Of a DNA stretch of 64,000 nucleotides, positions 38,283 through 63,521 are shown in pieces (positions within the stretch are counted from its first letter, which is position 1; each line of letters starts with the position of its first letter). A program made the position numbers and the translations under genes. The stretch comes from Diadema antillarum. Taxonomy: Eukaryota. A model generated the notes under the pieces. The model was not told the DNA's origin and did no database searches. It saw only the letters and a program-made list of their open reading frames with translations. The stretch spans positions 248,001-312,000 of the forward strand of contig NW_027270973.1 in the NCBI RefSeq assembly GCF_040938485.1. The letters are read 5' to 3'.

Positions 38283-39353
38283 ATGGCTGATTCGTCGCTC
38301 TCACTTCTGCTTCACGTCCCGATGTCTGCTCCTTCCAAGCGACCTCGTCCTCGACGTAAGACTAGGTTCACCGCATGGCAACTCGAGAGACTGAAGGCCG
38401 AGTTCGACATCGACCAATATCCCGACATCGTTTCCAGGAAGAAACTGGCTACTACACTGGGCCTGAATGAAGACAGAATACACGTAGGTTTCATTGTCAT
38501 CTTAAATATAGTATCTGGCATGAAAAGATGTAGTCGACCAATATTTAAGTTATTGATTAATTCAAATAATTTGAATTGACTTTTAAATGACACTACATAT
38601 CAATATTGCTGATAGTCACAGAGTTTCTTAATTTGAAATATCCAGTTTAATTTTGTCCAATGTACGCATAACATTGGGGGCAAACAAAACAACCTCTCAT
38701 TTAAAATTCTTCTTGCTTTAACTGAATGAATACTGATTCAGTTTTTATATAAATCAAGCAGTAATCGAAGATGTGTAATGTCTTAAGAGGCAGAATTGAT
38801 TAGGCTTTGCATGAGGATGATGACATCAGACTGTTGATTTGGGGGGCTTAGCTTAATCTTGATTTCATCATTTTCTTTCCAGGTCTGGTTTCAGAACCGT
38901 CGCTCACGTCATCGTCCATCCTCCCTCAAGTCCAACTCGCCTCCCATCGACAACCGTCTCGGTGTTGCAGAAAGTGAGACCCACTGTCTGCGTAAGAGGA
39001 AATGCTTTGCTACAAGCGACGCCATCGACCAAGAGAACACACCGCCGCCGAAGAAGTTCTCCATCAACGACTCACCGATGTCAATCGATTTCCTGTCTCG
39101 TAGCAGCCGATCACCGGGTTCCTGGTCAATCTCCAACATCAGCGACGAGCGTGACATCATGAGTTTCCAGCAGACGACATCTCATCGAAAGCAGCAGGGC
39201 GCCACCAATCCCTTGATGTCTGTAGACTTTCTCTCCCGAAGCAGCCGACCGACTTCTTCGTATCCATCGCCATACCGTGAAGGGAGTCTCTACCACAGCC
39301 CGTCGCCATTCTACATGTTTGGTCACCCCTACGCCTTCGTTGTACCGTTTTGA
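38283..39353 (+). CDS. PRD-class (Q50) homeobox gene, pmar1/micro1-like, gene 1, 223 aa
   Basis: Exons 38283-38483 and 38883-39353 (GT-AG, phase-0 intron between homeodomain codons 46/47, typical of PRD class). The homeodomain ends VWFQNRRSRHR. There are two eh1-like repeats, [11 protein letters not shown] and [11 protein letters not shown]. Confidence 0.92.
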
Positions 39354-39704
39354 ATGCTGTGATGCTGCTGAACTTTCGAAGGACTGACGTATCACCATTG
39401 GAGTCTCTATTACCGCAAAGTTATAGACCATCGCCATCCTATGTATCATTAATTTTGTTAACGATTTCAGTATTTATTAATAGTCAGGCCTTGTGGATTC
39501 TGGACATTCGTCTTGACGACCTGTTCTGTGACGTGGAGCCACGGTTTTGTTTGTGTTATCATAGTAACGCAGCTTTGAACAGAATTCTGAGTTATGATTG
39601 TAAATAAATGCACCTGTCTATTACCAAATCAATTTCTTTGAACAATACATGTGTGGGTGGATCAATTCGTATAAATAGTCGCTTGTGTGTGTATGTGTTT
39701 GTTC

Positions 39705-39745
<41 letters not shown>

Positions 39746-40034
39746 ATAATGCTTTATCTGTATAGAATGTGTGTGCATTTGATGTATTTTGTTTCTGTTT
39801 TGATTTGTTTTTTTTTTCAAATCAGTATTACACAAACTTGCAAACGGACTATGGTATGAAAAGGCGAATACATACAACATTCTCATGAACACGGACTTAT
39901 GGCACACACTCATATATTACTTATATATATATATATATATATGATTATATATATATATACATATAGCAAGAAGTAAGCGTGTTATTCCAATAATATCAAC
40001 AGAACTCAAATCAGTATGAACTTGAGTTCTGTTC

Positions 40035-40037
<3 letters not shown>

Positions 40038-40085
<48 letters not shown>

Positions 40086-40086
40086 T
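40038..40086. repeat. (TA)n microsatellite
   Basis: Visible directly. Other simple repeats: (CA)n 9244-9288, (CT)n ~27900-27970, (GT)n ~44408-44441, (AGT)n ~46840-46885 and ~58945-59000, (TATG)n ~61940-61984, (TA)n ~62082-62122. Confidence 0.9.
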
Positions 40087-41171
40087 GAGAGAGATAAAGA
40101 TTAAGTTTAAGGGAAGACCGAGAGATCAAAGAAAGCAAAATAATGAAGTGTTTAGTCTTCTCATGCTTGGAAAGGTCATAATATGACATTAAAAAGTGTC
40201 CTGTTATAGACCTCTACACGCTATACATTCGAACAAACACCAATCTCCACAAGGAAACGGACACACAAAATTATTTCTAAACGTTCACAACCCAAGCAAT
40301 GAAGTACGTCTATACAATAATATGGCATTATGATATGTCCATGCGTGAACAAAAAATACGCACATTCAGCTCGTTTTTCTTCAGACGGAAATCATTTCCT
40401 TGTTGTCAAACCAGAATGACTTGACGCTTTCTTACAAAACCGGAATCGATATCAAGTAGCAATTACATAATTTCAGACGACATTTTCCGTTTAAAACTAT
40501 ACAGATATTCTATCATATTGTTAATGGCGTTATAACTTAAGTGACACGTGCAGAATACGGATGAAGAGTTGCTGTAAAATTATTCTTTTTTTCTTGAATC
40601 ACAGTTAGTAGTACGAGGTGAAGTTGCCATTTCGTCTTCTTATTGTCAATGGTTGCTGGTTTGCTAATTAATTGACTTTTGTGCGTGACGACCTCATCAG
40701 TGTGTGCTCTGGGTGAAACACGTCTCATTTAATTTCATCATGAGGCTTTAATATGTTTTATTCACTTTTATCTGCACGTATATTTACATAATTATGAACT
40801 TTTCCCTTCCATTTATCAGATTTAAAAGTTTTCACTTCTTCTCATCTATATTCTCTCTCTTATCAAAAAGCAGGTTTATACATACAAGCTTACATACATG
40901 ATACAGTGATATAATCATATACATACCCAACCAAATGCATTATGGTATGCTTACATAGTGCGCACACCGATACTTAGGACCTAGAGGATTGAATCAACAT
41001 CAGTTTACTGTATAGTAGATAATGACCCATCCTCTCAGTATAGTAATTGAACGTAACCTATGTCTAGCACTATCAGAACAATTTAACTTAACTGATGGAA
41101 AGATAACACGATTGACATACTGTGGCCATGATTGACAGGGATACTTTACGCCAAAATAATCTTCGGCAAAA

Positions 41172-41308
41172 CTTTGATCTCAACTCTTTGATAGGATATA
41201 CCTTTCTTCTGTGTGGGTTGTTCAAACAACAAACTTAGTTCTATACCATCAGGTCTTAAATTTCTCGCATCCCATCATGAACAAAGGCAAACGTGGGATT
41301 AGGGATTA
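41172..41308. promoter_or_regulatory. candidate TCF + Otx enhancer
   Basis: CTTTGAT at 41172 and 41186, AACAAAG at 41280, and GGATTA at 41296 and 41303, all within 137 bp. Confidence 0.5.
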
Positions 41309-41511
41309 GGATCACAATAATGAAGTGCTCATTTAGGGTGAGAAGAAAGCCACTGTCTCAACGTATTGTTTTGTGCGTCGTTTCAATTGCCGCACACTTC
41401 TCATCCTGTCAGTTTAGAATGGAACTATATCAGCCAGTGGGAGAACATACCCATGTGACAGATCACTTATAATACGGAACTACGTCCCAATCTGTGCCGT
41501 TATTTAATCTC

Positions 41512-41880
41512 ATTGGTCATTTAATTTGACCAATCAGACTTGAATGGAAACTAATGAACTTCCCATCAAAATCACTTTTACGGTGAATCGAATTAAAAAA
41601 GAATCACTCGGCTTCACATGTCAAAAGTTCTCCTCTTATACTACATTAAGGGTCTATCCACTTTCCAACATGGGTTATTTATCACACTCTCTTCTCGATC
41701 ACTAAACTCTATGTAAGCTATCGATAGTTACAAAGAGATCAGTGTTCTCGATCATACTTCAAAGTCCGTTCCTACCATCTACACAGCGACATCGACGCTT
41801 GACTACGTTTAGCAAATTGCAGGTTGAGATTATTGTTAAAGTGAGCATCAAATCCAACATCGAATATTATTCACACATGC
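41512..41880 (+). pseudogene. decayed pmar1-like promoter + exon 1 relic
   Basis: ATTGG-N13-CCAAT at 41512-41534. GTCCGTTCCTACCA (41764-41777) is identical to exon 1 of genes 2 and 4. 41787-41828 encodes RHRRLTTFSKLQVE (cf. [14 protein letters not shown] of gene 5). It is frameshifted and has no exon 2. Confidence 0.7.
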
Positions 41881-43011
41881 GTATTATATCATTACACAAT
41901 GGTCGACAATAGCGGTGACCAGGTGCCCTGGGACCACAAAAAAAAAATGTTGGGCCACCAAAATTAAGAAAAACAAACAATAAAGAACATTAAACGAATC
42001 GGACATGAGTTAAATGTGATTTGACAATTCAATGTTTCTCGTATTTTTTAAAGGCAAAAGCGTCGATGATGATAGTACCCCATATAAATTATTTAAACTT
42101 CGAATCTATTCATTTTCTCTATTTTTTTCATTAGTGGCCGTGTGTGAAGTTGTATCTAATGACAATTTTACAGTGCCTTTTTGGTTTGATTTTGACTGCA
42201 TTTACTAGGGTCATCTTGAGCATGGGGGAGAATTTGGTTTTGCTTTTCAAAACGATTTTCAGAGATGAACTATTTGGTGATTAAGTCTGACTGTTAGCCA
42301 AATTTACCTTTACGTGCAAAATTGCTGATACTCTTAAACGAAATACCTCCACCTTCAAAAATTATATATTTGCTATTTACTGATAATTCTATTAAAACAA
42401 AAACAAACAGCAACGTGACACTGAATCAAATCACACTCTGTCTGTCTGTACTAATTCAAATACCATACCGGGATGGTATCTAGGATCTGCAAATAGAACC
42501 ATGTTCTGTAATAATCGACTGTACGACGAACGCAGGGTTTAATCTATTGTTCTTGTACTTCATTTGTTCCTTGTCGATCTTAGGAAGTTGGTATACTACA
42601 AGGGTATTGTTTGGTTTGTCGGCAGCGAACAGACAATCAGACCGCTAGTGAACAAAGGAAAAGTCATAGCTCTCTTGTAACAACGTGTAATTTGCGACAT
42701 GGATTAGGACACTCGCACTTCCCTTTGCATGGCTGAAGTCGGTGGGCATTCATGAAACTAAAACTTTACTTCAGTCGCTAATGCTGTCACGCCTATTGGT
42801 CGGTTTATTGGACCAATCAAACAACTTTGCTCGTTGAGGGCTTGTGAAAGTGGTGCTTGGCTTCTCCAATTCATAACCCACTTAATCACTGCAAGACTAC
42901 CAGCTACTTTGGTACTATCACCATACCTCATTCAGATTTTATTGAAGTAAAGTCGCACCTCTGAGGTTTTTCCTACAAACCGGCATCTTTACAAAACCAA
43001 TCCAATTCACT

Positions 43012-44063
43012 ATGTCTGGTCAATCGCTCTCGATTCTCTCTCAAGTCTCGACGTCCGTTCCTACCAAAGGCCTTCGTCGTCGACGTCCGACCGTGTTCAC
43101 CGAATGGCAGCTGGAGAAGCTGAAGGCTGAATTCGACATCGACCGATATCCCGACATCGTTTCTAGAGAGAAACTGGCTGCCTCACTCGGCCTCGATGAA
43201 GACAGAATACAAGTATGTAAAGTAGATGTATAAGATGTATAAAACAAATGATGAAGCAAAGTTGGTTATCTCTTTTAATACTGTTTCGATATTACGGAAT
43301 GTAGATTGATGGTTTCAAATCACAGTTATCACTTCACTGACTGCTATTACAATGCAATACCTGATATGAATCAAAATTTGGGACTCAAACACTCCTAGCA
43401 CAACAGCGAGAATATGAATGACCGAGGTTAAGAAGCACGTCCTTTATGTTTTCCTCGACATTTGATGACTTTTTTTTTCTGGCAGTAACATGTTACGTTT
43501 CATGTTTAAAAAAAAATGTTTATGCATGAAGCAAAATGCTAACGTCAGATTTGTTCTTTGTTTATCTTCAGGTCTGGTTCCAGAATCGCCGTTCACGCCT
43601 TCGTCGAGCTTCACTCAACTCCCTCTCTGCTCAACCAGACACCAGCGACAACCAGATCAACAGGCCAACCGACATCAAGGGAACAGAGTCTTCATCCACA
43701 GGAAAGCGTAAGCGATCAACGGAATGCGACGTCATCGACCAGGAGAACACACCGCCGCCCAAGAAGTCCGCCATCAACGACTCACCGATGTCAATCGATT
43801 TCCTGTCTCGTAGCAGCCGATCACCGGGTTCCTGGTCGACTTTCCGCATCAGCCAGGAGCGTGACATCATCAGTTTGCAGCAGACGACATCTCATCGAAA
43901 GCAGCAGGGCGCCACCAATCCCTTGATGTCTGTAGACTTTCTCTCCCGAAGCAGCCGACCGACTTCTTCATATCCATCGCAATACCGTGAAGGGAGTCTC
44001 TACCACAGCCCGTCGCCATTCTACGTGTTTGGTCATCCTTATGTCTTCGTCGTTCCACTCTGA
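43012..44063 (+). CDS. pmar1: pmar1/micro1-family PRD-class homeobox repressor, gene 2 (subtype A), 230 aa
   Basis: Exons 43012-43212 and 43572-44063. The homeodomain is RRRRPTVFT...[11 protein letters not shown]...EDRIQ|VWFQNRRSRLRRAS, followed by two MS(I/V)DFLSRSSR eh1-like repeats. The symbol is family-level; orthology was not tested. Confidence 0.92.
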
Positions 44064-44403
44064 ACGCTGTGATGCCGCCACACTCATAGGAGTGACTGAA
44101 ATGTGATATTTCATTTCTCATATTGAGAAGTGTATTGGATTCTCTGCCAGCAAACAATGATAGAAGACTAACATTCTTCCGACTTCAGAACTCCGTTCCT
44201 CTTTTCTGAGACACTCGAGATGATTCAGACTTGGATTCCACAACATTGCTTTGTTTCTTTGTCTTTAATGTTTGATAATAAACATTACCGTTTCACGTTA
44301 AGATTTCATTCATTTCATCTTATCTCATTCCTATGGTATTTTTTAGTATTGCATAAGTTTATATTTGTTCATGGTTGTTTGGTTGTATGAGTCTCTGTGT
44401 ATG

Positions 44404-44445
<42 letters not shown>

Positions 44446-46898
44446 TGTAAACAAAGTAACAAAATTATTACTTGAATGCATGTGTGCTTGCATGTATGCA
44501 GTTATTGTACGTTTCATTCTTTTGTTGTTACAGTCACTGACAGGGAGATAAGGATAAAATCAATGCTCGCTGGTATTCGTGCATGATTGAAATTAGGTCT
44601 TAACTTCACAAATAACTTGATGAATTGGAGATAGGGATTAGAATTTTAGACAACTTTCGGGTCAACAACGAAGTGATGTAAACGGAATCTGGTATGGCAG
44701 AGAAATGCAAGGAATAATATTGATAGAATATACAGATGGTAAAAATTGACCAGTTTGATAGCAAGAAGACGTAGCTGCCTGCTCCATACGATATTGACGA
44801 ACATATGCACAACACATGCACACACAACACACAACACACAACACACAAACGTACACACACACACTCAAACAAACAAACATACAATCATTAACAAAAATAA
44901 AATCAAGCAATGATAAAAAAATACCATAGACATGTGCGCACACACAGTGGAATTGAAAATCACAAGAGGCACATGTCTACATTATTATTTTCACATCGCA
45001 TTGTATCAAACTCCTCAGATTCGTACTTAACAGTTTACATTGCCCAGCACAACTTATCAGATTAAATTCAATTCTAATGTAGGGTAATTAAAATGTAAAG
45101 AATTCGAAATTGAATAAAAAGTCAAATGATAAAATATTGAATATCAGCGCTCAATTCATGAAGTATAGGATGTACTCTGAACATTGTATTCTAACTTGGA
45201 TCAATGTTAGTAAGCGTACTTGCATGAGTTGAGCGAACTCATGAAGAACTAAACAAGTTTGCTTAGATATCAACCATGGTGAAACAGAGAACTTTAAGAT
45301 AATCATGTCTGTACTCTATTTGACTTATAAAAGAAGGACACTAAATTCCGGGCCAAATAACCGTTACATTAAGATCGAATAAATCAGAAAGTTGAAGATA
45401 TGTAAAAACGAAAATGTTTTAACGAAACAGGGATATGATTACTCTCGCAATAGAACATAAGAATGTATCTGGGAGATAACTTATCACTTCAGGATTCTCC
45501 CACTACCTTATGTATGAAATCATAACAAGAGCGCTCTTCCTGTCTAAAATTGAGCAGAATCGTGTTTTCTCAAAGATACAGTCCTGAAACAACTTGATGC
45601 GAAAGACACAAGTACTTGAAGCAGACATCGTCACCGAGTCCTGGTTTACTTATTACTTTTATTACTTAGTAATGGTTATCACTATTTGAGCTGTAGTAGA
45701 TAAGGAAGCAAGACCTTAATGTTAATGATGTTCATTAGCAAATCGGTAACCAGTGCAGATCTCTCAGTGGTAGATAGGCTGTGATGAAATAGAATTGGGA
45801 AAAATCAACGTTTAAGACTGATGAAATAATTATGGCACATAGATTGAATGTGAGTAAATTGTTTTGGTAACTTCCACACAAGATTTGGAAACACACATCA
45901 CTTGAGATGCCATTTTAACGAATTCAGTGATGTAGCGCTCTATCCATTTTCTAATTTTTCTTTCCATCCCCTTTCTTTCGATCAAGAAAGGATAGAGTAT
46001 GGGGTAGTTCCCAAACTGTGATCACTGTCACGTTAACATTCAGCACGCCTTGTGATCCACGAGCTCAACTAGAGCCGGATCTTCTTCAGATGCAATTTTT
46101 GAAAGCTCGCTTCCCTACTATACTCTGCCGACAAAGTAGCTGAACAGGAGCACAAGTCGAAGGTTAAGCGAATAGGCATATTACCGATTCCTTTGAAGGG
46201 ATCCAGATCAGGGGCAGTGGCTTTAAGAAGCACGACTTTTTATTGTTGATACTAAATTGTCATTAAAACTCTGATGGCTTCAAAAGAACTCGGTGCGTAT
46301 AGAATGTGTCGGGTGGCGACATGTCTATTCAGCCTGTCACTGCCTGTCGCTTGAATAGAGCGTTCAATGTTCTCATAGAACCGCTATTGATTCGGTATCG
46401 CCTTTAAACTACAATGGCATTCTGCCGCTACACTGTCTCTAACGAGATGAAAGTAAACCGCCTCGTTGGGTCACTCAATTAATCCCTTTTGAAAGTTGTA
46501 CAATGGAGGATTTCAATCTATGTCGGACCCTTGCACTTCTATATCGGCCAGTCCGCATCCTGTCAATCATACGTCTCACGCCAACCTATGGGGTTGATAA
46601 TATCACATCACAGCGGCACCACGAAATGTCACTGGATATACCTTAAGGCAGCCTGTATAAGCGTATAATAACGATGCTAACAACAGTGATGATTACCATG
46701 ATCAAATTATGATTATTCGTACTAATAATATCATCTTATTTTATAGCACAATTGTTATTACAATGTATAACCATTACTGTCGTATTAGTATCAGTATTGC
46801 GTAGTATTAACGGCGTAATAGTACTTGTATTTTACAGTATAGTAGTAGTAGTAGTAGTAGCAGCAGCAGCAGTAGTAGCAGTAGTGGTATCAACGTAG

Positions 46899-48860: not shown

Positions 48861-51522
48861 TATCATATTATACATTACTCATGCAATCTATAACTGCTCT
48901 TAATTAATCATAATCAGGTCCTATAAGCTTGTTTCATTGCCTATAAATTCACTGCTCCGCACACTTAGCTTCTCACGTTGCTTCTTTTCTTCCTTCTTCA
49001 CTAGCTTCCATTCGGAGATGGATTAGTTAAGTTAGCACAAGACAAGTTTCAATGGCAGATTGCCCATTTCTGTGTGTGTTTCTTCTCTTTCTTTCTTTCT
49101 TTTTGAGGCTTCCATCACTTTGACGCACATTCTAAATACACAGACCCCTGCATTTTTCTCTTCAAAAAGTGTTTCATTGACTTCTTAGATTTCATTGAGT
49201 CTTGTTCTAATACTTCAAAGATTATTGTGGTTATTATACTGTAATGTTCGGTGTAGTTGTTTTTGTTTTGTGTAGATATTGTATACATCGCCATTTTCAT
49301 GTGTGATTTATACGAAAATGCAGAGAAAATATGAAAGTGAAATGAACTGAGTTGAACTCAAAATGTCAGGAACTGAATCCCGATACAGAGTAGCTGACTC
49401 ACCTATCTTCACATCACATAAAACCCGGCGTAGCTATGAGACCTGAGTTTTATCAGCTTGAACTATTTCGCTTTACCATTTTTTTTTCTAATGTTCAATC
49501 AGATACATCGTGTTAACATCAATTCGGCAAGGATTGATTTTCAATCTAATTGAATTCTATCTATACACAGAGTGTAGTAGCTAGTTCTCTGGGTAGCAGT
49601 GATGCCGGGATATTACTCGATGTCGAATGTTCCAAGCTTGAATAGGTCAAATTACCTGACCGGTGAGGTTAACGAGATGACCGAGACCAATCCCCTAATG
49701 GTCAGCCGCCGAACGATTAAAGCCAACAATAGATGACCAACGCTCAGCGTGTTTTGATCCCGGAGATGATAATTGTGCATCTAAAGAGTGTAATCAAACG
49801 CGCAGAGTTCAATGGAACCAGAGCGTCTTCCGCTGCATCAAACTTTGCCAAGATTCTTTTCAGCTCTTGAAAGGATCATTCAAGGTTAATGACAATGAGA
49901 TGAAGTAATTTGATCGAAGTTTGCCGCTGATGAACATACATACGACGTGTTCACCCTTGTCTGTCAATCAACCCAAACGTGTCAGTCACAGCTCCGTGAT
50001 GTTGCTTGAAAGGGATTCATGATGTATAGGAGAGATAGGTGATATATAGATATATGTTATGTAGGACATTTGGTATCAGTAACGTGTCATGTAAGCAAAT
50101 CAAGTAAAATATCCTCATGACAGTTTAAACCCCTGTGCACAGGTATAGCTACACCTATGAAAAAAAAATGTTATCTTTGTACTCCACACAATTCATACAT
50201 GTGACAACAAAAATCTAAGATCTATATTCATATCTCCCTGAGCGTGCATCTAAAACAATAATTATGTATACCTCTAATATGAATTTAGTTACTCCTTTTA
50301 TAGCTGTCATTCTGTTTTGGTTGATTACATTGATTTTCTGAGGCATTAGCGACAGTCGACATGATAATTCGGAATTAAACTGCATGAGCAGAAGCACGCA
50401 TCCTAGTTAGTTTCTATCTAAAGCCACCATATTGTACAAATATTACTTAACCCTGTCTTATTGTTCAAATGAAATATCTTACGTCCATATAAAAATCAAA
50501 TTGGCTTGACAATCGAAAGCAAGCATGCAGTAGATCTTTCTCGCTGCATGTGAGCGAGTCTTTTGTTTGTTTGTTTGCTTGTTTGTGCAGGAAAGGGTGG
50601 ATCTGTGTAAATGATATAAATTTTTAAACAGATTATCGTCTCTAGGAATAGGCCAATTTACTGAAATGTTCAAATTAATTATATGAATCTTGGTATCTAC
50701 ATTAACGTTTTTATTGATTTAAGGGTCCCTATGAAATGATGTAGGACTATACTGTAATTAAATCTTGAGTGCATGCTCGGTTGTTGCTGTATTGGGCAAA
50801 CCTCGGACAACCTTTCTACTTTGTGTTGTTGATTTATGTCTCTGTTATTGTTTACTTCTTGTATATTGTGTGTATATTGCATAAACACGCTATAGATTTA
50901 ATGTAATTCTCTTACTTATTCTTATACATCTCTGGTTTCACACTCATGTTTGAGGTCTAGGGTCAATAATAAGTATAACACTCTGGTCAACTGCTTTTCA
51001 TATTACAAAGTAAAATCATTAACCACAGCATCGGACCATACAGGTTTTTTTTTTTTTTTTCAATGACGATATTCTGATTTTTGTGTTCTTACTTATATTA
51101 TATATGTTTTACATTTTTGTAACAGAAAAACTGAAGATTCCTCATTTTTTGTATGTGTGTTTGTGTGTATACAGTATGTATATGTATATATAGAGAGGGG
51201 GAAATACACACACGCACGCGCGCACCCACACACACACACATACACAAAGGCATATACACACATCATTTATACACCAACCTACACTTGAAAACGACACACG
51301 CCACGAATTGAAAGAGACGGGATAAAAGGACAAAATACTAGAATGGCAAATAATATTCAGAGGGATGTATTCTTTTGTTACATTTAATATAGACGACGAC
51401 ACGACATAGAATCATAGCTGAAGGCAAGATCATGATATATATCAACAATACGTCCATTATGGAGAGCGTTCATGTGTTGTACAATCCTTTTCTCGAATGT
51501 TCTCTTGAGTTCATTCAAAAGT

Positions 51523-52592
51523 TCAGGATGGTATGATGTAGACAAAACGATGACCAACAGACGTGTAGAATGGAGCTGGTGTGTAGTAGAGACTCGCTTT
51601 TGTCGATGGATACGAAGAGGTTGGTCGGCTGCTTCGGGAGAGGAAGTCTACAGACATCAAGGGATTGGTGGCGCCCTGCTGCTTTCGATGAGATGTCGTC
51701 TGCTGCAAATTGATGATGTCACGCTCCTTGCTGATGCGGAAAGTCGACCAGGAATCCGGTGATCGGCTGCTACGTGACAGGAAATCGACTGACATCGGTG
51801 AATTGTTGATGGCGGACTTCTTGGGCGGCGATGTGTTCTCCTGGTCGATGACATCGCATGTCGAAGATCGCTTTCGCTTCCTACTGTATTCTACCTCAGG
51901 TTCTGCGAATTCGTTGTCGATGCCTCTCTTCCCGGTAGTTGGTTGAACTGGATCGGAAGTACGGACGGCTCGACGATAACGTGCACGACGATTCTGGAAC
52001 CAGACCTGCACATGGAGAAAAGAACACATCACAGTTTGTTTAGATTTCACGTACAAAAGTACATTAACATCATCATAATCATCATCATCATCGTTATAAT
52101 AATGATAATATACGTAATATACAGCACATTATCCACAACACGTTAAAATGATGTTGGACTATAATTATTTGAGCCATTAAGCCCCCGTTCATTAATGAAA
52201 GTTGAATTATTAGTAGTTTCAGTACTTGTATAAATCACGATAAGTATAGTAAATGGGCTCATATCTTTTAGCGCAGAATACACTAACACTTCAGTAACAG
52301 CATTGTTACAAGGTATTTACTAAATTCACAAAATAATGAGACATACATAAGCGTTATTTGCTGATGGGAAAAAAACACACAAAATATTACTTACTCGAAT
52401 CCTGGCTTCGGTGAGCCCAAATTCTGCGGCCAGCTTCTCTCTAAAAACGATGTCAGGATATCGGTCTCTGCTGAATTCGACTTCGAGTCTCTCCATCTGC
52501 AGTTTAGTGAACTTGGTCGGACGTCGACGACGTGACTGTTTGGTTGAAACTGACGACGACTTGTGGGCGAGCAACCAGAGGGAATCAGCCAT
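51523..52592 (-). CDS. pmar1/micro1-like PRD-class homeobox gene 3 (subtype B), 226 aa
   Basis: Exons 52592-52395 and 52005-51523 (GT-AG, phase 0). The homeodomain is RRRRPTKFTKLQMERLEVEF...EARIR|[12 protein letters not shown], with two [11 protein letters not shown] repeats. Confidence 0.92.
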
Positions 52593-54832
52593 AGTCGATG
52601 ATGAGAGAAAAGTGCTTCGAATAAAGTGCTCTACGAAGATCGGTATCACGCGTCTTGACTTGCTGGGCTTGTGTCGAAAAGTGAAGTGCATAATTTTGGG
52701 ACCACTGTTGATCTTTACCCGATGAGAGAGATCAGTAATAAGAGTAATGGACTCCTCCTCCCACTGATGCTTGATTTTCATTGGTCGAAGTTGTACAACC
52801 AATCACTAAAGACAAAGGCGATGATGATTACTCGAAGATGACGCTACTATGGATTTGAGTATCCGTCGTTACGAACATCCAGCGTTTGAACGCGAGAACA
52901 ATAGGAAAGGGTATTAAAACCGCCCGCCCGCCCGCCTTCGCGAGCTCCGATTTAGAAACAATAGCTCTACCAATCAGGGTGGTTTTCAGAAGTCAGAGGC
53001 GGTAGGGAAGAAAGCTCTTCATGAATTTTGTTGGGAGCCGCAAAGGGACAAAAGACACAAAACTTTCTTTAGCTCATCTAGAGTCGCATAACTTAGATTC
53101 TGAACAATGATATTGGTATACTCAGGTAATGAAAGTGTAATGCAACCTGATGGGCGACGTTCGCGAGAGAGTGGAGGCATATCATTATACTCAATAATTC
53201 CAGAGAAGTGGAACATTTCTTGCTTTTTTTGACATAAAACTATCCTAATACTTTAGAGTGAGGTAGCCACGACATCACAAATCTTCCCTTATTATAGTTG
53301 ATGCATGAAAACATACTGGATTTTGTCTGGTCAGTATTTAACTTTTCAATTTCAATCTAAAAGCTGATTTCATTTCCCGACAAAACATAGGGTAAAAATG
53401 AACATTGTAGAATGAAAAAAATTATAATTGAGGAACTATAAAGTCATTAGACATTGTATTAATAAATCAGAAGTGGCCGAAATAAGGTATAACCTTGCGT
53501 AAAGTGCAAAAAATGGTGGGACCCTCTAAAAAGTAGAGCTTGTAGAATAAGACCCTCTGGTAGAAAACATCAATGGAGAAAAAAGAAGAGGGTGAAGTCT
53601 GGAAGCCCGATGAAAAATAGAGTAACAGACAAATACACTTACATAGATGGTAATAAACATGAAACGAGACTAGACAACAATAGAACTACTGAAGGAAATG
53701 TTGTAAGACACAAACAAACAAACAAACAAACTTTATAGAACATCAAATAAAGAAAGAATTATAGTTGTGCCAGTAATCACACAGTTATTTCAGTTGAAGA
53801 ACATGAGAGCATTCTTTTGCTGCAATAATCAATCAATTCATTAACATGATTTAAATGAAAGTTACACTGTGTACTTCACCTAAATTTTTATAATGATAAA
53901 TATTACGACTACTATCACAATTTTCTATGCATTTAATTCAGAAATTTCTGCATTCTACCCCCTCCACTTTCTATGTTTTCTTCTACTCCTTTTTTTTTGG
54001 GGGGGGGGGTGGGATTCTGATTATAATGATACTTTCACTTCTATATATGTATGTTTGATTTTGAGTGTATTTACTAGCGTCAAACTGGATGTATACCATA
54101 ATCACTTTCGCTGTTGTTGCACATAATATATATTATAATCGATGTAGATGAATAATTTCGAAAGCTCAGGTAAGGTAAATTCAGTATTAACTGGCAGATA
54201 CATTATCAACTAAAAGCCGTTACCAGCAAAGAGTATCATACATGGCTAGTATGGATGAGGTTTGTGCTTAGGTATCATTGGCGTTTAAAGCATATATCGG
54301 CGGCGAATTTCACTCAACTTTTGCATTGACGGGATGATCATTCCAAAAAAAAAAAAAATTAAACGACCTTCAACAAATGAAAAGAACAGTTCATTGTTCC
54401 TTAGTTTCAAAATGTGGATCAGCGGTAAAACTTTCGTGTACGCAGTAACGTTATGCCAGGCTATTGTTTCGTTTGTCGGCAGCGGATCGACAATCAGGCC
54501 GTCAACAGGTTAATGAACAAAAGGCAATGGTTCTCTTGTAATTTGCAGGCCGACAGGTATCCGGAAGATCCGCACTCCTGTTAAGATCAGCGATTGGCCG
54601 GTTTACCGGACCAATCATCAACGTGTCTTTGTTTAATTGTCAGTCGTGTGTAAGAGTGATTATTCGCGGCTTTGCTAATTCTTACTTATCTTTTCCCAAG
54701 TGAATCACAAGCTGGTGTCACACGCTACTTTAATACAGTCACTACATTCGTTCAGACTGTCTCGAAGTTAAGTCGTTTCTTTCACGTTTTTCCACAAACC
54801 GATTATTTTTACAAACCTAATCCCAATCCGGT

Positions 54833-55863
54833 ATGGCTGATTCACTGCTCTCCCTTCTCCCTCAAGTCTCGACGTCCGTTCCTACCAAGGGTCTTCGTCG
54901 TCGACGTCCGACCGTGTTCACCCAATGGCAGCTCGAGAGGCTGAAGGCTGAATTCGACATCGACCGATATCCCGACATCGTTTCCAGAGAGAAACTGGCT
55001 GCCGCACTCGGCCTCGATGAAGACAGAATACAAGTATGTAAAGCAAAGATGTATAAATGATGAAGTAAAGTTGATTTTCTCTTGTAATACTGTTTTGATA
55101 TTACTGAATGTAAATTAATGGTTTCAAATTACATCTATATTCTCATCGGCTGTTATTACAATGCAATACCTGAGATAGATGAAAATTTGGGACTCAAACA
55201 TTTCTAGCAAAGCGAGAATATAAATGGCCGAGGTTAAGAAGCACGTCCTTTATGTTTTCCTCGACATTTGGTGACTTCTTTCTGGCAGTAGCATGTTACG
55301 TTTTATGTTTAAAAAATGTTTGTGCATGAAGCAAAATGCTAACGTCAGATCTGTGATTTGTTTAACTTCAGGTCTGGTTCCAGAATCGTCGTACACGCCT
55401 TCGTCGAGCTTCACTCAACTCCCTCTCTGCTCGATCAGACATCAGCTACAACCAAATCAACAGGTCAACCGACATCAAGGGAACAGAGTCTTCATCCACA
55501 AGAAAGCGTAAGCGATCAACGGAATGCGACGTCATCGACCAGGAGAACGCCACGCCACCCAAGAAGTCCGCCATCAACGATTCACCGATGTCAGTCGATT
55601 TCCTGTCTCGTAGCAGCCGATTACCGGATTCCTGGTCGACTTTCCGCATCAGCGAGGAACATGACGTCATCAATTTGCCGCAGACGACATCTCATCGAAA
55701 GCGGCAGGGCGCCACCAATCCCTTGATGTCTGTAGACTTTCTCTCCCGAAGCAGCCGACCGACTTCTTCGTATCCATCGCCATACCGTGAAGGGAGTCTC
55801 CAACACAGCCAGTCGCCATTCTGCATGTTTAGTCATCCTTATGTCTTCGTCGTTCCACACTGA
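54833..55863 (+). CDS. pmar1: pmar1/micro1-family PRD-class homeobox repressor, gene 4 (subtype A), 230 aa
   Basis: Exons 54833-55033 and 55372-55863; exon 2 was translated by hand and has no stop before 55861. The homeodomain ends VWFQNRRTRLRR, with two [11 protein letters not shown] repeats. The symbol is family-level. Confidence 0.92.
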
Positions 55864-58800
55864 CTGTTGTGAAGCTGCCGCACTTTCATAGGAGTGACTG
55901 AAATGTGATACTGTATATCATTTCTCATATTGAGAAGTTTGTTTGACACTTTCCTGCAAACAATTTTGTAAACAAGAATGCTTCCGACTTCAGAACACTC
56001 TTCCTCTGTTCTGAGACACTCGCGATGAATTCAGCAACATTGTTTTGTTTCTTTATCTTCAATGTTTGATAATAAACATTACGGTTTGACATTGGGATTT
56101 CATTCATTTCATCTTATCTTATTCCTCTGGTATTTTTGAGTATTGCTTAATTTTATATTTGTTCATGGTTGTTTGTTTGTTTGTTTGTGTGTTTGTTTGT
56201 TTGTTTGAGTCTCTGTGTGTGTGTGTGTGTGTGTTTGGTGTAACCCAAGTAACACAATGATTACTTATATGCGTGTGTGCTTGCTTGTACGTATAGTTAT
56301 GTATGTGTCGTTCTTTTGTTGTTACAGTGGGCTCGACTTTGAGATAAGGGTAAATGCTCGCCGGTATTCATGCTTGATTGAAATTAGGTCTTCATAAATA
56401 ACTTAATGAATTTTAGAGAGGAACTAGAATTTTTAGTTAACTTTGGATCAACAATGAAGTGATATAAACGGAATCTGGAATGAGAAATACAAGGGAGAAT
56501 TGATAAAATGTACAGATGGTAAATATTGACAAATTTGATACTAAGAAGTCACAGCTGCCTGTCATGATACGATATTGATGAACACGTGCACAACACATAC
56601 ACACCGAACACACACACACACACACATACACATACACACACACACAGACGCACGCAAAGACATTCAAACAAACAAACAAACAGTCATGAACAAAAATAAA
56701 ATCAAGCAATACTCTAAAAAAAAAAATACAATAGACATATGAGCACACACAGTCCGACAGTGGTAATTCAAATCACATAATTTATCTACATTTTTATTGT
56801 CACATCGCATTGTATCAAGCTCCTCAGTTTTGTACTTCTAGTTTTCATTGCCCAGCAGAACTTAAAGATTAAATTCAATTCAAATGTAGGATGATTAACA
56901 TTTTAAGAATTCGAAGAATTGAATAAAAGTTCAAAATTTAATGATAAAAATATAATATTGAATATCAGCATTCAATTCATACAGGATGGGATGCATTATT
57001 AACATTGTATTCTAACTTGGATCAATGTTAGTCGACGTACTTGCATATGAAGTTCAGTGAACTCGTGAAGAACTAAACAAGTTTGCTTGAATATCAACCA
57101 CTGTGAAACAGAGAAGCTAAAGATAATCATGTCTGTGCTCTTTTTGACTTATAACAAAAGGACACTAGATTCCGGACCAAACAAACCGTTACATTAAGAT
57201 AGAATAAATCAGAAAGTCGAAGAAAACTAAAAACGAAAATGTTTTCACGAAACATGGATATAATTACATTCCCTAATAGAAAATAAGAATGTATCTGGGA
57301 GATGACTTATCACTTTACGATTCTCCTGATACATTGTATGAAATTATGACAAGAGCGTCCTCATTGTTACAAGTCATGACAGTCCTGAAACAAGTTGATG
57401 CGAAAGACGCAAGTTCTTGAAACAGGTCACGACATCATCATCGAGTCCTGTTTTTATTACGTAATTAGTCAGTAATATAGTTATTACGATTTGAGTTGTA
57501 TGAGATCTGTAATCATCGATAAGGGAGCAAGACCTTAATGTTAATGATGTTTGTTGGAATTTTGGAAACATGTGCAGATCTCTCCGTGGTGGATAGGCTG
57601 TGATAAAAAGGAACATAAAAAAAACAGCGTTTAAGACTGATGAAATAATTACGCCAAATAGATTGAATACGAGTAAATTGTCTTTGCAACTTTTACACAT
57701 AATTTGGAAACAAAGACTACTCCCAATGCCATCTTAACGAATTCAGTGATGAAACGTTTTATCCACTTTCTACCTTTTCTTCCCACTCCCTTTCTTTCGA
57801 TCAAGAAAAGATAGAGTATTGGGGTAGCTTCCAAACTGGGATCACTGTCACGCTATACCATTCAGTACGCCTTGTGATTCACGAGCTCAACTATATAGAG
57901 CCGGATCTATTTCAGACGCAATTTTTGCACCCTCGCTTCCCTACTCTTTACTCTGTCGACAAAGTAGCTGAACAAAAGGACAAGTCGAAGGTTAAGCGAT
58001 TTAAGGCATATTACCGATTCTTTTGAGGGGATCAAGATCAGGGGCAGTGGCTTTAAGAAGCACAACTTTTTATTGTTGATACTAAATCGTCATTAAAACT
58101 CTGATGGCTTCAAAAGCACTCGGTGCGTATAGCATGTGTCGGATGGTGACATGTCTATTCAGCCTGTCGCTTGAATAGAGCGTTCAATGTTCTCATAGAA
58201 TCGCTATTGATTCGGTCTCGCCTTTAAACTACAATGGCATTCTTCCGCTACACTGTCTCTAACGAGATGAAAGTAAACCGCCTCGTTAGGTCACTCAATG
58301 AATCCCTTTTGAAAATTATACAATGAAGGATTTCAGTCTATGTCGTACCCTTGCACCTCTGTATCAGTCAGTCAGCATCCTGTCAATCATACATCTCACG
58401 CCAACCTATGGCGTTGATAATCATATCACAGCGAGCACAAACCACATGAAAATGTCACTGGATATACCTTAAGGCAGCGTACATTAGCGATAATAATGAT
58501 AAAAATTGCAGTGATGATTACCATGATAAAGATTAATTATGATTCATCGTACTATCATCACTTTACCATATATTTGCTGTAACCATTAACATCGTAGAAT
58601 AGTATTAGTGTTGTGTAGTATTAGCGGAGTAATTTTAATTGTATTTCACAGTGTTTGTTTGCTTGTTTGTTTGCTTTTATTTCTGCATTCAATCAGATGC
58701 AATTTGAATGCAAACTTCAAAAAGTACAAAGACAAAGAATAACAAGTGCAGTGAAATAAATCGATAACAGTACATAAATAGCTTCACATAGGTGATTGCA

Positions 58801-58946
58801 TTGAGCAATGTAGATACACAGAAACATAAAATAAAATATACAGTATTTTTCAGTAAACAATAGAGATAATTGAATGCAGGAGACCACCATCATAAGCGAT
58901 TAAGCTTGAAATGGATGGAGGCCTCACTATTTCACAGTGTAATAGC

Positions 58947-58986
<40 letters not shown>

Positions 58987-61940
58987 TAGTAGGAGTAGTA
59001 GAAGTAGTAGCAGTAGTAATAGTAGTATCAAAGTAGGCCTATAGTAGTATAATTATAATCATCGTCTTCACAATCAGATACGTGTATAAGCGCAAAACAT
59101 CAGACACTTTGGACAATGTACATGTAAAAACAAATGCACCAAAATAAGACACAATATACAGTAAACTTTATCAGAATTGAAATAGCCTCAGCATGACAAT
59201 TGAGTCAATTACTTGTTTTCCCAAATCGTGAACAAATATACAGATAGCAATATCTGAATGAATTGTCTTTAGTTTACGATTATGTTGAATAAAAAAGCAG
59301 ATTTACCATAAAGTGAGTGATCAGTTGTAAAGACAAACAAAGGAATATGCGTCCGGAAGTATCATTACGTCTTCAGTTTAGATGTAGACTACGCGTGCGA
59401 TCCTAAAGTTTAGAAGTTTCAAATTCGTGTGCCCCTTTTGTAACCCTGTAAATTAAATTCCTTTCATAGACTGGAACATTGTAGAAGTATAGGCATCAGG
59501 AATTTAAAATGCTATACAACCCTCACACGGATATACATGCGAACAATCAAACAAGTAACCAAACAAACAAACAAACAAACAAACAAACCCTCAATTTGAA
59601 CACAGTCGTGCACACTCATTATCACTTTATACACCCACTGGCAGGAGTACATATAGGACCGCTCACACGCGCGCGCGCACACACACGCGCACACACACAC
59701 GCACACACACACACACACACACACACGTCTATTAATCTACAACTATTTATCATAATATAAGCACGTTGCATTGCCTAATTCACTGCTCCGCACACTTAGC
59801 TTCTCATGTTGCTTCTTTTCTTCCTTCCTCGTTATAGCTTCCAATCGAAGATGCCATTAACAAATTAAGTTAGTAATGTGTACAGGACAAGTTTCAATGA
59901 CAGATTGCCCATTTCTGTGCATGTTCCCTTCTTTTTATTTCTATTTTTTTGAGACTGCCATCACTTTAATGCATATTCTAAATACACAGACTCCTGCATT
60001 TTTTCTCTTAAAATGAAAAATAAAAGTAGCATTGACGTCTTAGATTTCATTTAGTGTTGTTGAAGTATGATTATTGTGATCATTATACTGTGATATACTC
60101 TGTAGATGTTTTTGTTTTGTGTAGATATTATTATCCATCGCCATTTTCATGCGTGATTTCCACGGAAATGCAGAGAAAATATGAAAGTGAACTGAAATGA
60201 GTTTAGCTCACATGTCAAATCACATAAAACCTGGCGTAGCTACGAGACCTGAAATTCATCAGCTTGCCCACTTTTGCTTTACCCATTTTTTCTCATATTC
60301 AATCAGATAGGGCCTACATCGTGTTAACCTCGATTCAGCAAGGACTGTATTTTCAATATAATTGAATTCTACTAGAGTGTAGTAGCCAGTTCTCTGGGTA
60401 GCAGTGATGCCGGGATATTACTCGATGTCGAATGATGTTCCGAGCTTCAATAGGTCAAATTACCTGACCAGTGAGGTTAACGAGATGACCGAGACCTGAA
60501 AAGAGCCATACTACCTTTAATCCCCTAATGGTCAGCCGTCAGGCGACTAAAGCCAACAATAGCTGACCAATGCTCAGCTTGCTTTTGATCCATGCGATTA
60601 TGACTTGTGCATTTAACGAGTGTAATCAAACGCGCAGAGTTCAATGGAACCAGAGCGTCTTACGCTGCATCAAACTTTGCCAAGATTCTTTTCAGCTCTT
60701 GAAAGGATCATTCCAGGCTAATGACGATGAGATAAAGCGATTTGATCGAAGTTTGCCGCTGATGAACCTAGACACAAAGTGAACACCCCTGACTGTCAAT
60801 CAACCCAAACGTGTCAGTCGCAGATTCGAGAAGAACTGCAACTACGTGATGTTGCATGACTTAGATTCATTATGTTTAAATAGAAGAAAGTGATAGATAT
60901 ATGATAGGACATAATGGATATCAGTCACGCGTCATGTGAGCAAATGATATAAAATATTCTCGTGACAATTTAAACTCCTGTGCACACAGTATCGCTACAC
61001 TGATAATAATTTCTTTATACTTCATACAATTCATAACGGGCTCAACAGAAATCTGAGATCTGTATTCATATCTCCCTGAGCGTCCACCTAAAACATTCAT
61101 TATAATCATACCTCTGATTTGAATTTAGTTTCTCCTTTATAGCTGTCATTCTGTTTTGGGTGATTACATTTATTTTCCGAGGCATTGGCGACTGTCGACA
61201 TGATAATTCGGAACGGACCCGAGCAGCAGCATGGATCCAAGGTCGTTTCAATCTAGAAATAAAGCGACTACATTGCACAATAACCATTTTCAATTGCTCA
61301 TGTGAAGTATCTTGCCTCCATATATTATAATGAGTCAATAATTCAATCTGCTTGACTATCGAAAGCAAACATGTAATATATATGTTGGGGTTTTTTGCTG
61401 CAGGTGAGAGTTTTTTTGTTTGTTTCTTATTTGTTTGGTTGTTGTTTTTTTAAGGAAAGGATGGGTCTGTGCAAAGTGAAATAGATTTTGAGCAAACTAT
61501 CGCCTCTAGGAATCTATGATCATGCATTTTGATATTTGCGATACCAATAGGTCATTTTTCCAATAATAAACCTCGAGACCAATAATTAACGTCTTGATTT
61601 ATTCGGTCCTAATGAAATAATGTAGGACTAGTGTAATCAACTCTTGTTTGCATGCAACTTATGTTGCTGCTATTTCGAGCAAGCCTCAGACAACCTGATT
61701 TGTGTTTTGATTTGCATTTCTGTTACGTGCTATTACGTGTAAATATGTGTAAATGTATTTATGGTATAAACACACTACTGGTAATTGATCTTCTCTATGT
61801 TACGCTGTAAATAATCTTCATCTTCGCTTTCACACTCATACTTTATGTCTTAAAGATAGTGATTAATAACACTCTGGTCAATTGTTTTCCATGTTTCAAA
61901 CTAAACATCACTAAGTCCACACCATCGAATTATATGCATG

Positions 61941-61974
<34 letters not shown>

Positions 61975-62080
61975 TGTATGTATATGATTATATGCATATA
62001 TAGTCTATAATCATAAACATACGTGCATACATATTATAATCCGATGGTGTAATGTATATCAGTGATAGACCTAATATCTG

Positions 62081-62129
<49 letters not shown>

Positions 62130-62462
62130 TTATATATGTTTGTGTGTGTGTGTTCACAGTATGTATATATGTTTAGAGAGAGGGGAGATACACACACACA
62201 CGCACACAAAGACGTACACACATCATTTCATACACCAACCTACACTTGAAAACGACTCTTAAAAAGGACGAATACGAGAATGGCAAATAATATTCAGAGG
62301 GATGTGCTCTTTTTGTACATTTTAATATAGACAATGACACGACAGTAGAAGCATAGCTGAAGGCAAGATCATGATAGAAATCAAAATAAACGTCCATTAA
62401 GGAGAGTGTTCATGTGTTGTACAATCCTTTTCTCGAATGTTCTCTTGAGTTCATTCAAAAGT

Positions 62463-63521
62463 TCAGGATGGTATGATGTAGACGAAACGATGACCAATAG
62501 ACGTGTAGAATGGAGCTGGTGTGTTACAGTAGTAGAGACTCGCTTTTACCGATGGATACGAAGAGGTCTGTCGGCTGCTTCGGGAGAGGAAGTCTACAGA
62601 CATCAAGGGATTGGTGGCGCCCTGCTGCTTTCGATGAGATGTCGTCTGCTGCAAATTGATGATGTCACGCTCCTTGCTGATGCGGAAAGTCGACCAGGAA
62701 TCCGGTGATCGGCTGCTACGAGACAGGAAATCGACTGACATCGGTGAGTCGTTGATGGCGAACTTCTTAGGTGGCGGCGTGATCTCCTGTTCGATGACAT
62801 CGAATGTCGAAGATCGCTTTCGCTTCCTACTGTATTCCACCTCAGGTTCTGCGAACTCGTTGTCGATGCGGCTCATCCCGGTAACTGATTGAACTGGATC
62901 GGAAGTACGAACGGTTCGACGATAACGTGCACGACGATTCTGGAACCAGACCTGCCCATGGAGAAAAGAACACATCACAATTTGTTTAGATTTCATGTAT
63001 AAGAGCACATTAACATCATCATCATCATCATCGTCGTCGTTATAACAATGATAATACACTTAATATTCTCCATGACACGTTTCTTTTACTGTGTATAATA
63101 TTATAATAGACTACCATTTTTGAGCCATTAAGATCCTCTTCATTAATGAAAGTAACATAATTAATAGTTTTAGTACTTGGATAAATCACGATAAATAGCA
63201 AATTGGCTCATATCCTTGAGCCCAGAATACACTGACACTTACTTTCAGTAAGAAGTCTGTTAGAAAATATTTACTAATTGACAAAATAATAACGAGACAT
63301 GTATAAAACAAAATATTGCTTACTCGAATCCTGGCTTCGCTGAGACCAAATGCTGCGGCCAGCTTCTCTCTAGAAACGATGTCAGGATATCGGTCTCTGC
63401 TGAATTCGACCTCGAGTCTCTCCAGCTGCAGTTTGGTGAACTTGGTCAGACGTCGACGACGTGAATGTTCAGTTGAAACGGACGACGACTTGTGGGCGAG
63501 CAACCAGAGGAAATCAGCCAT
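62463..63521 (-). CDS. pmar1/micro1-like PRD-class homeobox gene 5 (subtype B), 228 aa
   Basis: Exons 63521-63324 and 62951-62463. The homeodomain is [20 protein letters not shown]...EARIR|[12 protein letters not shown], with two [11 protein letters not shown] repeats. Confidence 0.92.

What the first reader, a model, noticed from the sequence alone, without database searches (positions are those of the whole stretch)
39168..62900. Inverted conservation: repressor tail homogenised across subtypes while homeodomains diverge
Seen: the 34-aa stretch [34 protein letters not shown] is identical in genes 1, 2 and 3 and nearly so in genes 4 and 5. At DNA level, genes 1 and 2 differ at 1 of 102 nt and genes 2 and 3 at 4 of 102, including synonymous sites. 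Yet their homeodomains, introns, UTRs and promoters are far more diverged or unalignable. The shared tract starts around DQENTPPPKK and ends abruptly before the subtype-specific C-termini. Established: the duplicated eh1-like peptides of Micro1/Pmar1 mediate repression. Inference: recurrent inter-paralogue gene conversion (helped by the inverted orientation) or exon-part shuffling keeps one standard repression module attached to diversifying DNA-binding domains.
Basis: partly seen in the sequence, partly recalled or inferred. Interest (0 to 1): 0.75.

Follow-up and report, generated by a model that had tools for sequence, protein, structure and literature searches.

The report
Gene-conversion patch in Diadema pmar1 genes
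Five pmar1/micro1-type homeobox repressor genes of the sea urchin Diadema antillarum belong to three old subtypes, yet share a much younger ~250-bp stretch encoding the two repression motifs; this is a clear but mechanistically ordinary case of patch-wise gene conversion between paralogues.

Summary
The window (Diadema antillarum) holds five intact two-exon pmar1/micro1-like genes of three subtypes: A = g1, B = g2 and g4, C = g3 and g5.

- **The tract.** An 83-codon stretch of exon 2, carrying both eh1-like motifs, has no fixed difference between subtypes in 23 genes from D. antillarum and D. setosum. The 120 codons upstream hold 55-99 fixed differences. The C subtype's C-terminal tail holds 11-15 more.
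- **Synonymous divergence.** The ratio of between-subtype to same-subtype dS is 7.1 upstream and 1.3 in the tract. Same-subtype dS is the same in both parts (0.10 against 0.11). Nucleotide-level constraint is therefore excluded, and the tract simply has a much younger common ancestor.
- **Trees.** Subtype clades are strongly supported upstream. In the tract the AU test rejects them (p = 0.003-0.04).

The tract is not homogenised species by species: D. setosum has the same syntenic cluster and the same tract, and within-species distances equal between-species ones. The main homogenisation therefore predates the species split. A few species-private variants shared across subtypes point to small later exchanges. 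The inverted orientation is not needed, and the homeodomains are old and under purifying selection, not shown to be diversifying.

This is a known mechanism found in a family where I found no report of it. Other windows of this genome were noted for pmar1 clusters, but not for this tract.

The parts
38283..39353 (+). g1, subtype A pmar1/micro1-like gene (223 aa): exon 1 38283-38483, intron, exon 2 38883-39353. The shared tract is 39021-39269; sharing with subtype B continues to the stop codon.
   Evidence: positional orthologue in D. setosum
43012..44063 (+). g2, subtype B gene (230 aa, identical to NCBI D. antillarum protein P0001): exon 1 43012-43212, exon 2 43572-44063; shared tract 43731-43979.
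   Evidence: Pfam Homeodomain at residues 23-79, E 5e-20
51523..52592 (-). g3, subtype C gene (226 aa): exon 1 52395-52592, exon 2 51523-52005; shared tract 51604-51852; subtype-specific C-terminal tail 51523-51603.
54833..55863 (+). g4, subtype B gene (230 aa): exon 1 54833-55033, exon 2 55372-55863; shared tract 55531-55779.
62463..63521 (-). g5, subtype C gene (228 aa): exon 1 63324-63521, exon 2 62463-62951; shared tract 62550-62798.

Best explanation
The five genes are Diadema antillarum members of the pmar1/micro1/hbox12 family: a paired-like homeodomain followed by two eh1-like motifs. Three subtypes (A, B, C) separated long ago; synonymous divergence in the homeobox is 0.45-1.2, about 7 times that of same-subtype pairs, orthologues included. 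A patch of about 250 bp in exon 2 was later copied between the subtypes by interlocus gene conversion. For the A/B pair the patch is about 335 bp and runs to the stop codon. The patch encodes the TPPPKK stretch, both eh1-like motifs and the linker between them. Its common ancestor across all subtypes is only about 1.3 times as old as same-subtype divergence, and so close to the D. antillarum / D. setosum split. The main homogenisation therefore happened in their common ancestor (shown). Small patches have moved between neighbouring B and C or A and B copies since then (supported, small numbers). The sharp borders are most simply explained by sequence divergence on both sides, which blocks heteroduplex extension, and by selection against overwriting the subtype-specific parts (inferred). 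One consequence is that all subtypes carry the same presumed Groucho-recruiting module (function inferred from other urchins).
For: Species and family: g2 is 100% identical to a D. antillarum protein, and the best non-Diadema hits are Micro1/Pmar1 of Scaphechinus, Hemicentrotus and S. purpuratus (47-51% identity, E 1e-48 to 1e-50). Fixed subtype differences in 23 genes: A-B 55, A-C 99, B-C 80, none of them in alignment codons 120-204 (15-gene version). Permutation gives p < 5e-5. Ratio of between-subtype to same-subtype dS: 7.06 upstream (CI 5.2-10.2), 1.30 in the tract (1.10-1.58), 2.28 in the C-terminus. Same-subtype dS is 0.110 upstream against 0.099 in the tract (per-pair values). ML trees: upstream part A 100/99, B 98/95, C 100/100. 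In the tract no subtype clade appears, and the AU test rejects A (p = 0.010), B (0.003) and C (0.039) (for 15 genes). PHI test on the whole CDS: p = 0.0002. The patch is flanked on both sides by unalignable or diverged sequence, which requires conversion rather than a single crossover. Quartets of positional orthologues: 29-55 subtype-pattern sites in exon 1 against 0-3 in the tract. Later exchange: the C copy DaH_1 carries a patch identical to its neighbouring B copies and groups with them in the tract tree (88/83). There are 8 species-private variants shared by two or more subtypes in the tract against 0 in exon 1. GC3 is 0.66-0.69 in the tract against 0.42-0.63 in the other segments (0.52-0.57 in exon 1). 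Across distant urchins the homeodomain is more conserved than the tract (55-83% against 44-67%), so the inversion is specific to Diadema paralogues.
Against: No site in the tract is diagnostic for either species, and within-species distances equal between-species distances, so there has been no species-wide sweep since the split. PHI within the tract alone is not significant (p 0.73-0.86). The excess of shared private variants is borderline (Fisher p = 0.056), and at least one of them sits in a CpG and could be a recurrent mutation. The direction of transfer and the donor subtype are unknown. The 34-aa part has a somewhat lower same-subtype dS (0.067, about 1.6 of 26 sites), so a little extra constraint there cannot be excluded. 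No expression data exist for these genes.
Confidence: 0.8

Rival explanations
1. There was one ancestral event only. A single conversion or exon-part replacement, or one burst of them, in the Diadema ancestor gave all subtypes the same tract. Nothing has moved between subtypes since, and the apparent later exchanges are recurrent mutations or sorting of old variants.
For: No species-diagnostic sites, and equal within- and between-species distances. The tract tree is nearly star-like. PHI within the tract is not significant. Shared private variants are few.
Against: The AU test rejects monophyly of A, B and C copies in the tract, although each subtype is a clade upstream. Linked derived variants (His, Val, Pro within 19 bp) are shared by a C copy and its adjacent B copies in D. 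antillarum only. 24% of pairs of informative sites are incompatible in the tract, against 9% upstream.
Confidence: 0.15
2. There was no exchange at all. The tract is alike because selection on the protein and on the nucleotides (an embedded RNA element, an exonic enhancer or an overlapping frame) has held it constant since the subtypes split.
For: The second eh1-like motif and its flanks are conserved as protein across euechinoids. dN in the 34-aa part is low (0.024).
Against: Same-subtype and orthologous dS in the tract (0.099) equals that upstream (0.110). dN/dS in the tract is about 0.5. Across distant species the tract is less conserved than the homeodomain. No Rfam family matches.
Confidence: 0.03
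3. The identity is an assembly artefact: collapsed or chimeric reads of a highly heterozygous, uncollapsed assembly.
For: The D. antillarum assembly retains both haplotypes (PMC13511894). Short-read contigs pile up on the tract.
Against: The same tract, with the same borders, is present in every copy of an independent chromosome-level assembly of another species, in other contigs of D. antillarum, and in contigs of independent runs.
Confidence: 0.02

Closest known systems
Pmar1 / Micro1 / Hbox12 paired-like homeodomain repressors of euechinoid sea urchins (S. purpuratus pmar1, H. pulcherrimus micro1, P. lividus hbox12)
   Same: Two-exon structure, paired-like homeodomain with Q50, two [12 protein letters not shown]-type eh1-like motifs in the same order, a (H)PYVF-type C-terminus in subtypes A and B (subtype C has a different one, HRFVYIIPS), and multi-copy clusters with copies in both orientations (PMC5370098; PMC4709884).
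   Different: Camarodont copies are reported as nearly identical throughout (PMC4709884). Diadema has three subtypes with homeodomains only 62-78% identical and with unalignable promoters and introns. Both Diadema motifs begin with Met, not Phe. Function and expression in Diadema are unknown.
P. lividus hbox12 subfamilies (Cavalieri, Geraci and Spinelli 2017, PMC5370098)
   Same: Subfamilies with different promoter sequences inside one multigene family, copy-number variation, and bigenic units in both orientations.
   Different: [quoted passage not shown] It reads species-specific clades as duplication after speciation and does not mention conversion. Here the subtypes predate a species split and the genes are demonstrably mosaic.
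Domain-limited interlocus gene conversion in tandem gene families (textbook cases recalled from memory, not tested here: human gamma-globin HBG1/HBG2, red/green opsins, RHD/RHCE)
   Same: A short patch with low synonymous divergence and a discordant tree, flanked by older sequence; raised GC at third codon positions.
   Different: Here the converted patch is the effector (co-repressor) module of a developmental transcription factor, while the DNA-binding domain stays subtype-specific. The main event is shared by two species rather than being species-specific.

Membership tests
Pmar1/Micro1/Hbox12 family | Paired-like homeodomain (Q50, WFQNRR) | tested here: met
   Pfam PF00046 at residues 23-79, E 5.2e-20; WFQNRR is present in all five genes.
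Pmar1/Micro1/Hbox12 family | Two exons, with the intron inside the homeobox just before VWFQNRR | tested here: met
   GT/AG phase-0 introns of 338-399 bp in all five genes. PMC5370098 describes the same two-exon structure.
Pmar1/Micro1/Hbox12 family | Two eh1-like motifs C-terminal to the homeodomain | tested here: met
   MS(I/V)DFLSRSSRS and [12 protein letters not shown] align with both motifs of Sp, Hp, Lv and Scaphechinus proteins. Their need for repression is taken from PMC4709884.
Pmar1/Micro1/Hbox12 family | Closest sequence relatives outside the genus are Pmar1/Micro1 | tested here: met
   E 5e-50 to 6e-47, 47-51% identity over 96-97% of the query. The Diadema copies stand apart from the camarodont and clypeasteroid copies across one branch of an unrooted tree (94/91).
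Pmar1/Micro1/Hbox12 family | Transient micromere expression and repression of hesC | not testable with these tools
   No RNA run holds the stretch.
Interlocus gene conversion tract | Local drop of synonymous divergence between paralogues, with a normal local substitution rate | tested here: met
   dS ratio 1.30 in the tract against 7.06 upstream; same-subtype dS 0.099 against 0.110.
Interlocus gene conversion tract | Tree of the tract conflicts with the tree of the flanks | tested here: met
   AU p = 0.010, 0.003 and 0.039 against the subtype clades that have 98-100% support upstream; PHI p = 0.0002.
Interlocus gene conversion tract | Patch bounded on both sides by older sequence (not a single crossover) | tested here: met
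   Fixed differences resume at codon 205 for subtype C. For A/B, similarity ends about 15 nt after the stop codon and the 3' flanks do not align.
Interlocus gene conversion tract | Concerted evolution: copies more alike within a species than between species | tested here: not met
   Different-subtype p-distances are 0.077 and 0.069 within species against 0.075 between species, and there is no diagnostic site. Only 8 minor species-private variants are shared across subtypes. This places the main event before the split; it does not argue against conversion.

The most novel reading that the evidence does not exclude
The borders of the patch are kept by selection. Diadema runs three Pmar1 subtypes with different promoters and DNA-binding arms, perhaps in different embryonic territories as the hbox12 subfamilies of P. 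lividus are. Repeated conversion acts as a standardising device that keeps their co-repressor interface interchangeable. If so, modular concerted evolution would be part of how the double-negative gate family diversifies.
Probability: 0.15. Interest if true: 0.65.

Novelty: new member of a known kind. Interest (0 to 1): 0.42.

Why it matters
Pmar1 is the first zygotic switch of the sea-urchin skeletogenic network, and its family evolves very quickly.

- **Effect on published trees.** Trees of this family are used to argue for species-specific duplication. Mosaic genes such as these show that whole-gene trees can mislead, and that the homeobox and the repression module must be analysed separately.
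- **Family history.** An early-branching euechinoid carries three old subtypes with unalignable promoters but one common repression module.
- **A testable question.** Do the subtypes differ in expression or in targets while they repress in the same way?

The mechanism itself, patch-wise gene conversion, is ordinary.

Tried and rejected
- **Nucleotide-level constraint.** Rejected by the equal same-subtype dS and by the absence of any Rfam match.
Tested against D. setosum and not found.
- **PHI test within the tract.** Not significant, so it gives no independent proof of repeated events.
- **Orphan tract copies that could act as donors.** None found in the window or in the D. setosum regions; every tract copy sits in a gene.
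- **Expression and splicing evidence.** No RNA run holds the stretch. The runs laid were short-read contigs only, and their depth cannot be read as copy number.
- **Contig JBFRCO010000528.1 (L006) as the allelic haplotype of g2-g4.** Only partly so. It is 95% identical from the g3 intron through g4, but about 90% identical on the 3' side of g3. Its other B copy is equally far from g2 and g4. I therefore used it as extra copies, not as alleles.
- **GENECONV and RDP.** Not installed. I replaced them with a fixed-difference run permutation, PHI, AU tests and quartet site patterns.
- **Fifth D. setosum positional orthologue (second C copy).** It is cut by the end of the locus and was not recovered.
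Full report
**What is there**

The window has no N runs. The 34-aa peptide occurs five times, three times unchanged, once with two substitutions and once with one. Each copy lies in exon 2 of an intact two-exon gene:

| gene | strand | exon 1 | exon 2 |
|---|---|---|---|
| g1 | + | 38283-38483 | 38883-39353 |
| g2 | + | 43012-43212 | 43572-44063 |
| g3 | - | 52395-52592 | 51523-52005 |
| g4 | + | 54833-55033 | 55372-55863 |
| g5 | - | 63324-63521 | 62463-62951 |

All introns are phase 0 with GT/AG sites and lie directly before VWFQNRR. The proteins (223-230 aa) have a Pfam homeodomain (E 5e-20) followed by two eh1-like motifs.

g2 is 100% identical to an annotated Diadema antillarum protein. 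The nearest proteins outside the genus are Micro1/Pmar1 of Scaphechinus, Hemicentrotus and Strongylocentrotus (47-51% identity, E about 1e-48 to 1e-50). The genes fall into three subtypes: A = g1, B = g2 and g4, C = g3 and g5. The B(+)/C(-) pair is duplicated with a period of about 11-12 kb.

**The observation**

- Between subtypes, blastn aligns only the homeobox part of exon 1 (72-79%), about 40-60 bp at the start of exon 2, and the 3' part of exon 2 (85-92%). Introns, promoters and 3' flanks do not align.
- Same-subtype paralogues and interspecies orthologues align over whole loci at 80-89%.

**A sister species gives the decisive comparison**

D. setosum chromosome OZ188189.1 carries the same order and orientation, A(+), B(+), C(-), B(+), C(-), at 5.622-5.658 Mb. 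It has further copies at 5.58-5.60 Mb and 5.84-5.87 Mb, the latter a head-to-tail A,B,A,B array. More D. antillarum copies came from the same contig and from a second contig. In all I aligned 23 intact genes: 13 from D. antillarum and 10 from D. setosum (6 A, 12 B, 5 C).

**Borders of the tract**

Sites at which every copy of one subtype differs from every copy of another number 55 (A-B), 99 (A-C) and 80 (B-C).

- All of them lie in alignment codons 4-119 or, for subtype C, in codons 205-234. None lies in codons 120-204 (15-gene version).
- A and B have no fixed difference from codon 120 to the stop codon.
- The run without fixed differences is 249-335 nt. In 20000 shuffles of the alignment columns the longest run was 79-129 nt (p < 5e-5).
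- In window coordinates the tract is 39021-39269, 43731-43979, 51604-51852, 55531-55779 and 62550-62798.

**Selection or shared recent ancestry?**

Pooled Nei-Gojobori dS, with the ratio of between-subtype to same-subtype values (per-class values):

| segment | dS, same subtype | dS, different subtype | ratio (bootstrap 95% CI) |
|---|---|---|---|
| upstream, codons 1-120 | 0.110 | 0.777 | 7.06 (5.2-10.2) |
| tract, codons 121-204 | 0.099 | 0.129 | 1.30 (1.10-1.58) |
| C-terminus, codons 205-234 | 0.165 | 0.377 | 2.28 (1.52-3.63) |

- The synonymous rate in the tract is therefore normal, and dN/dS in the tract is about 0.5.
- The tract is alike because it is young, not because it is constrained.
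- Across distant urchins the usual order holds: homeodomain 55-83% identical, tract 44-67%. Among Diadema subtypes it is inverted: homeodomain 62-78%, tract 84-93%.
- No Rfam family matches the region.

**Trees**

- With 23 genes, the upstream part gives clades A 100/99, B 98/95 and C 100/100.
- The tract gives none of them, and the AU test rejects each: A p = 0.010, B p = 0.003, C p = 0.039 (for 15 genes and four segments).
- In the C-terminal 30 codons, C is a clade (100/100) while A and B are mixed.
- PHI on the whole CDS gives p = 0.0002.
- The patch is bounded on both sides by older sequence. For A/B the 3' border lies about 15 nt after the stop codon. A single unequal crossover cannot produce this, so the event was a non-reciprocal patch transfer, that is, gene conversion.

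**When did it happen?**

- No tract site is diagnostic for a species.
- Different-subtype p-distances are 0.077 within D. antillarum, 0.075 between species and 0.069 within D. setosum.
- Quartets of positional orthologues show 29-55 subtype-pattern sites in exon 1 but only 0-3 of any pattern in the tract.

The tract of all subtypes thus coalesces at about 1.3 times the same-subtype divergence, in the common ancestor of the two species.

**Is there later exchange?**

The evidence is real but thin.

- The AU rejections mean that tracts moved after the copies of each subtype had begun to diverge.
- A C copy on contig JBFRCO010000528.1 (DaH_1) has three linked changes within 19 bp (His, Val, Pro), the same as in its neighbouring B copies; the His and Pro changes were seen only in D. 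antillarum copies. It groups with those B copies in the tract tree (88/83).
- Ser at alignment codon 133 is private to D. antillarum and shared by the adjacent g2, g3 and g4.
- In all, 8 species-private minor variants are shared by two or more subtypes in the tract, against 0 in exon 1 (Fisher p = 0.056).
- PHI inside the tract is not significant.
- GC3 is 0.66-0.69 in the tract against 0.42-0.63 in the other segments (0.52-0.57 in exon 1). This fits GC-biased conversion, but there is no outgroup control.

**Conversion among same-subtype copies**

For the quartet g2, g4 and their D. setosum orthologues, 424 sites support orthology.

- Nearly all of these lie in the flanks. Between +30 and +990 of the gene only 9 do.
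- In the same interval 14 sites support grouping by species and 8 support the crossed grouping.

The transcribed part of the B genes has therefore been exchanged between paralogues since, or around, the species split.

**What is inferred, not shown**

- That the borders are kept by loss of homology and by selection against overwriting subtype-specific parts.
- That the module recruits Groucho. PMC4709884 states that the two eh1 motifs are necessary for Spu-Pmar1 repression; both Diadema motifs begin with Met instead of Phe.
- That the subtypes differ in expression or targets. No RNA run holds the stretch, and the laid runs were DNA contigs only.

**Literature**

Cavalieri et al. 2017 (PMC5370098) describe the P. 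lividus family. [quoted passage not shown] The paper contains no mention of conversion or concerted evolution. My full-text searches for pmar1 together with 'gene conversion' or 'concerted evolution' found no paper combining them, and the two papers that mention both pmar1 and Diadema are general reviews. The held library is incomplete, so this is not proof that nobody has reported it.

**Verdict**

The conversion reading is supported, but the main event is ancestral to both species, not species-specific. Recurrence is modestly supported, and the inverted orientation is irrelevant. This is a known mechanism and a new, clean example in a developmentally important family.

Noticed in passing
window 43012-44063 and 54833-55863 (g2, g4) with L001/L002 orthologues: Orthology signal is strong in the flanks (424 sites) but nearly erased inside the B genes from about +30 to +990. 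There, sites grouping by species or in the crossed pattern outnumber the orthology sites. This suggests conversion between same-subtype paralogues that is confined to the transcribed region.
   Followed up: partly
window 4787-4832, 5457-5523 and 60375-60433 (-): Short exon-1-like homeobox relics (76-80% identical to g2 exon 1). One lies between g4 and g5, and equivalents exist in the D. setosum locus L004. The first two lie in the stretch that another first-reader note calls a chimeric homeobox relic.
   Followed up: no
window 53514-53815: A stretch in the g3-g4 divergent intergenic region. Short-read contigs of all four runs pile up on it as strongly as on the multi-copy exons. It is probably a dispersed repeat.
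   Followed up: no
L006 (D. antillarum JBFRCO010000528.1) against window 49295-58389: The second contig is 95% identical from the middle of the g3 intron through g4, but only about 90% identical on the 3' side of g3. This points to a recombination breakpoint inside the g3 intron, or to a paralogous rather than allelic unit.
   Followed up: partly
L004 6436-7130 (D. setosum) and L008 13745-14716 (D. antillarum): Decayed family members: a C copy whose exon 2 frame ends after 92 aa, and an A-like copy with a truncated exon 1. This fits birth-and-death turnover alongside conversion.
   Followed up: no
all five genes, e.g. window 43779-43823 and 43920-43964: Both eh1-like motifs begin with Met (MSIDFL, MSVDFL), whereas the first motif of camarodont Pmar1 begins with Phe. 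The two motifs are only 29 of 45 nt alike at the DNA level, so they are not being homogenised with each other.
   Followed up: partly
g3 and g5 exon 1 (52395-52592, 63324-63521): The subtype C N-terminal part (first 85 residues, including the homeodomain) sits on a long branch (0.51 changes per site, against 0.24 for A and near zero for B) in a protein tree with other urchins. B looks like the conservative form.
   Followed up: no
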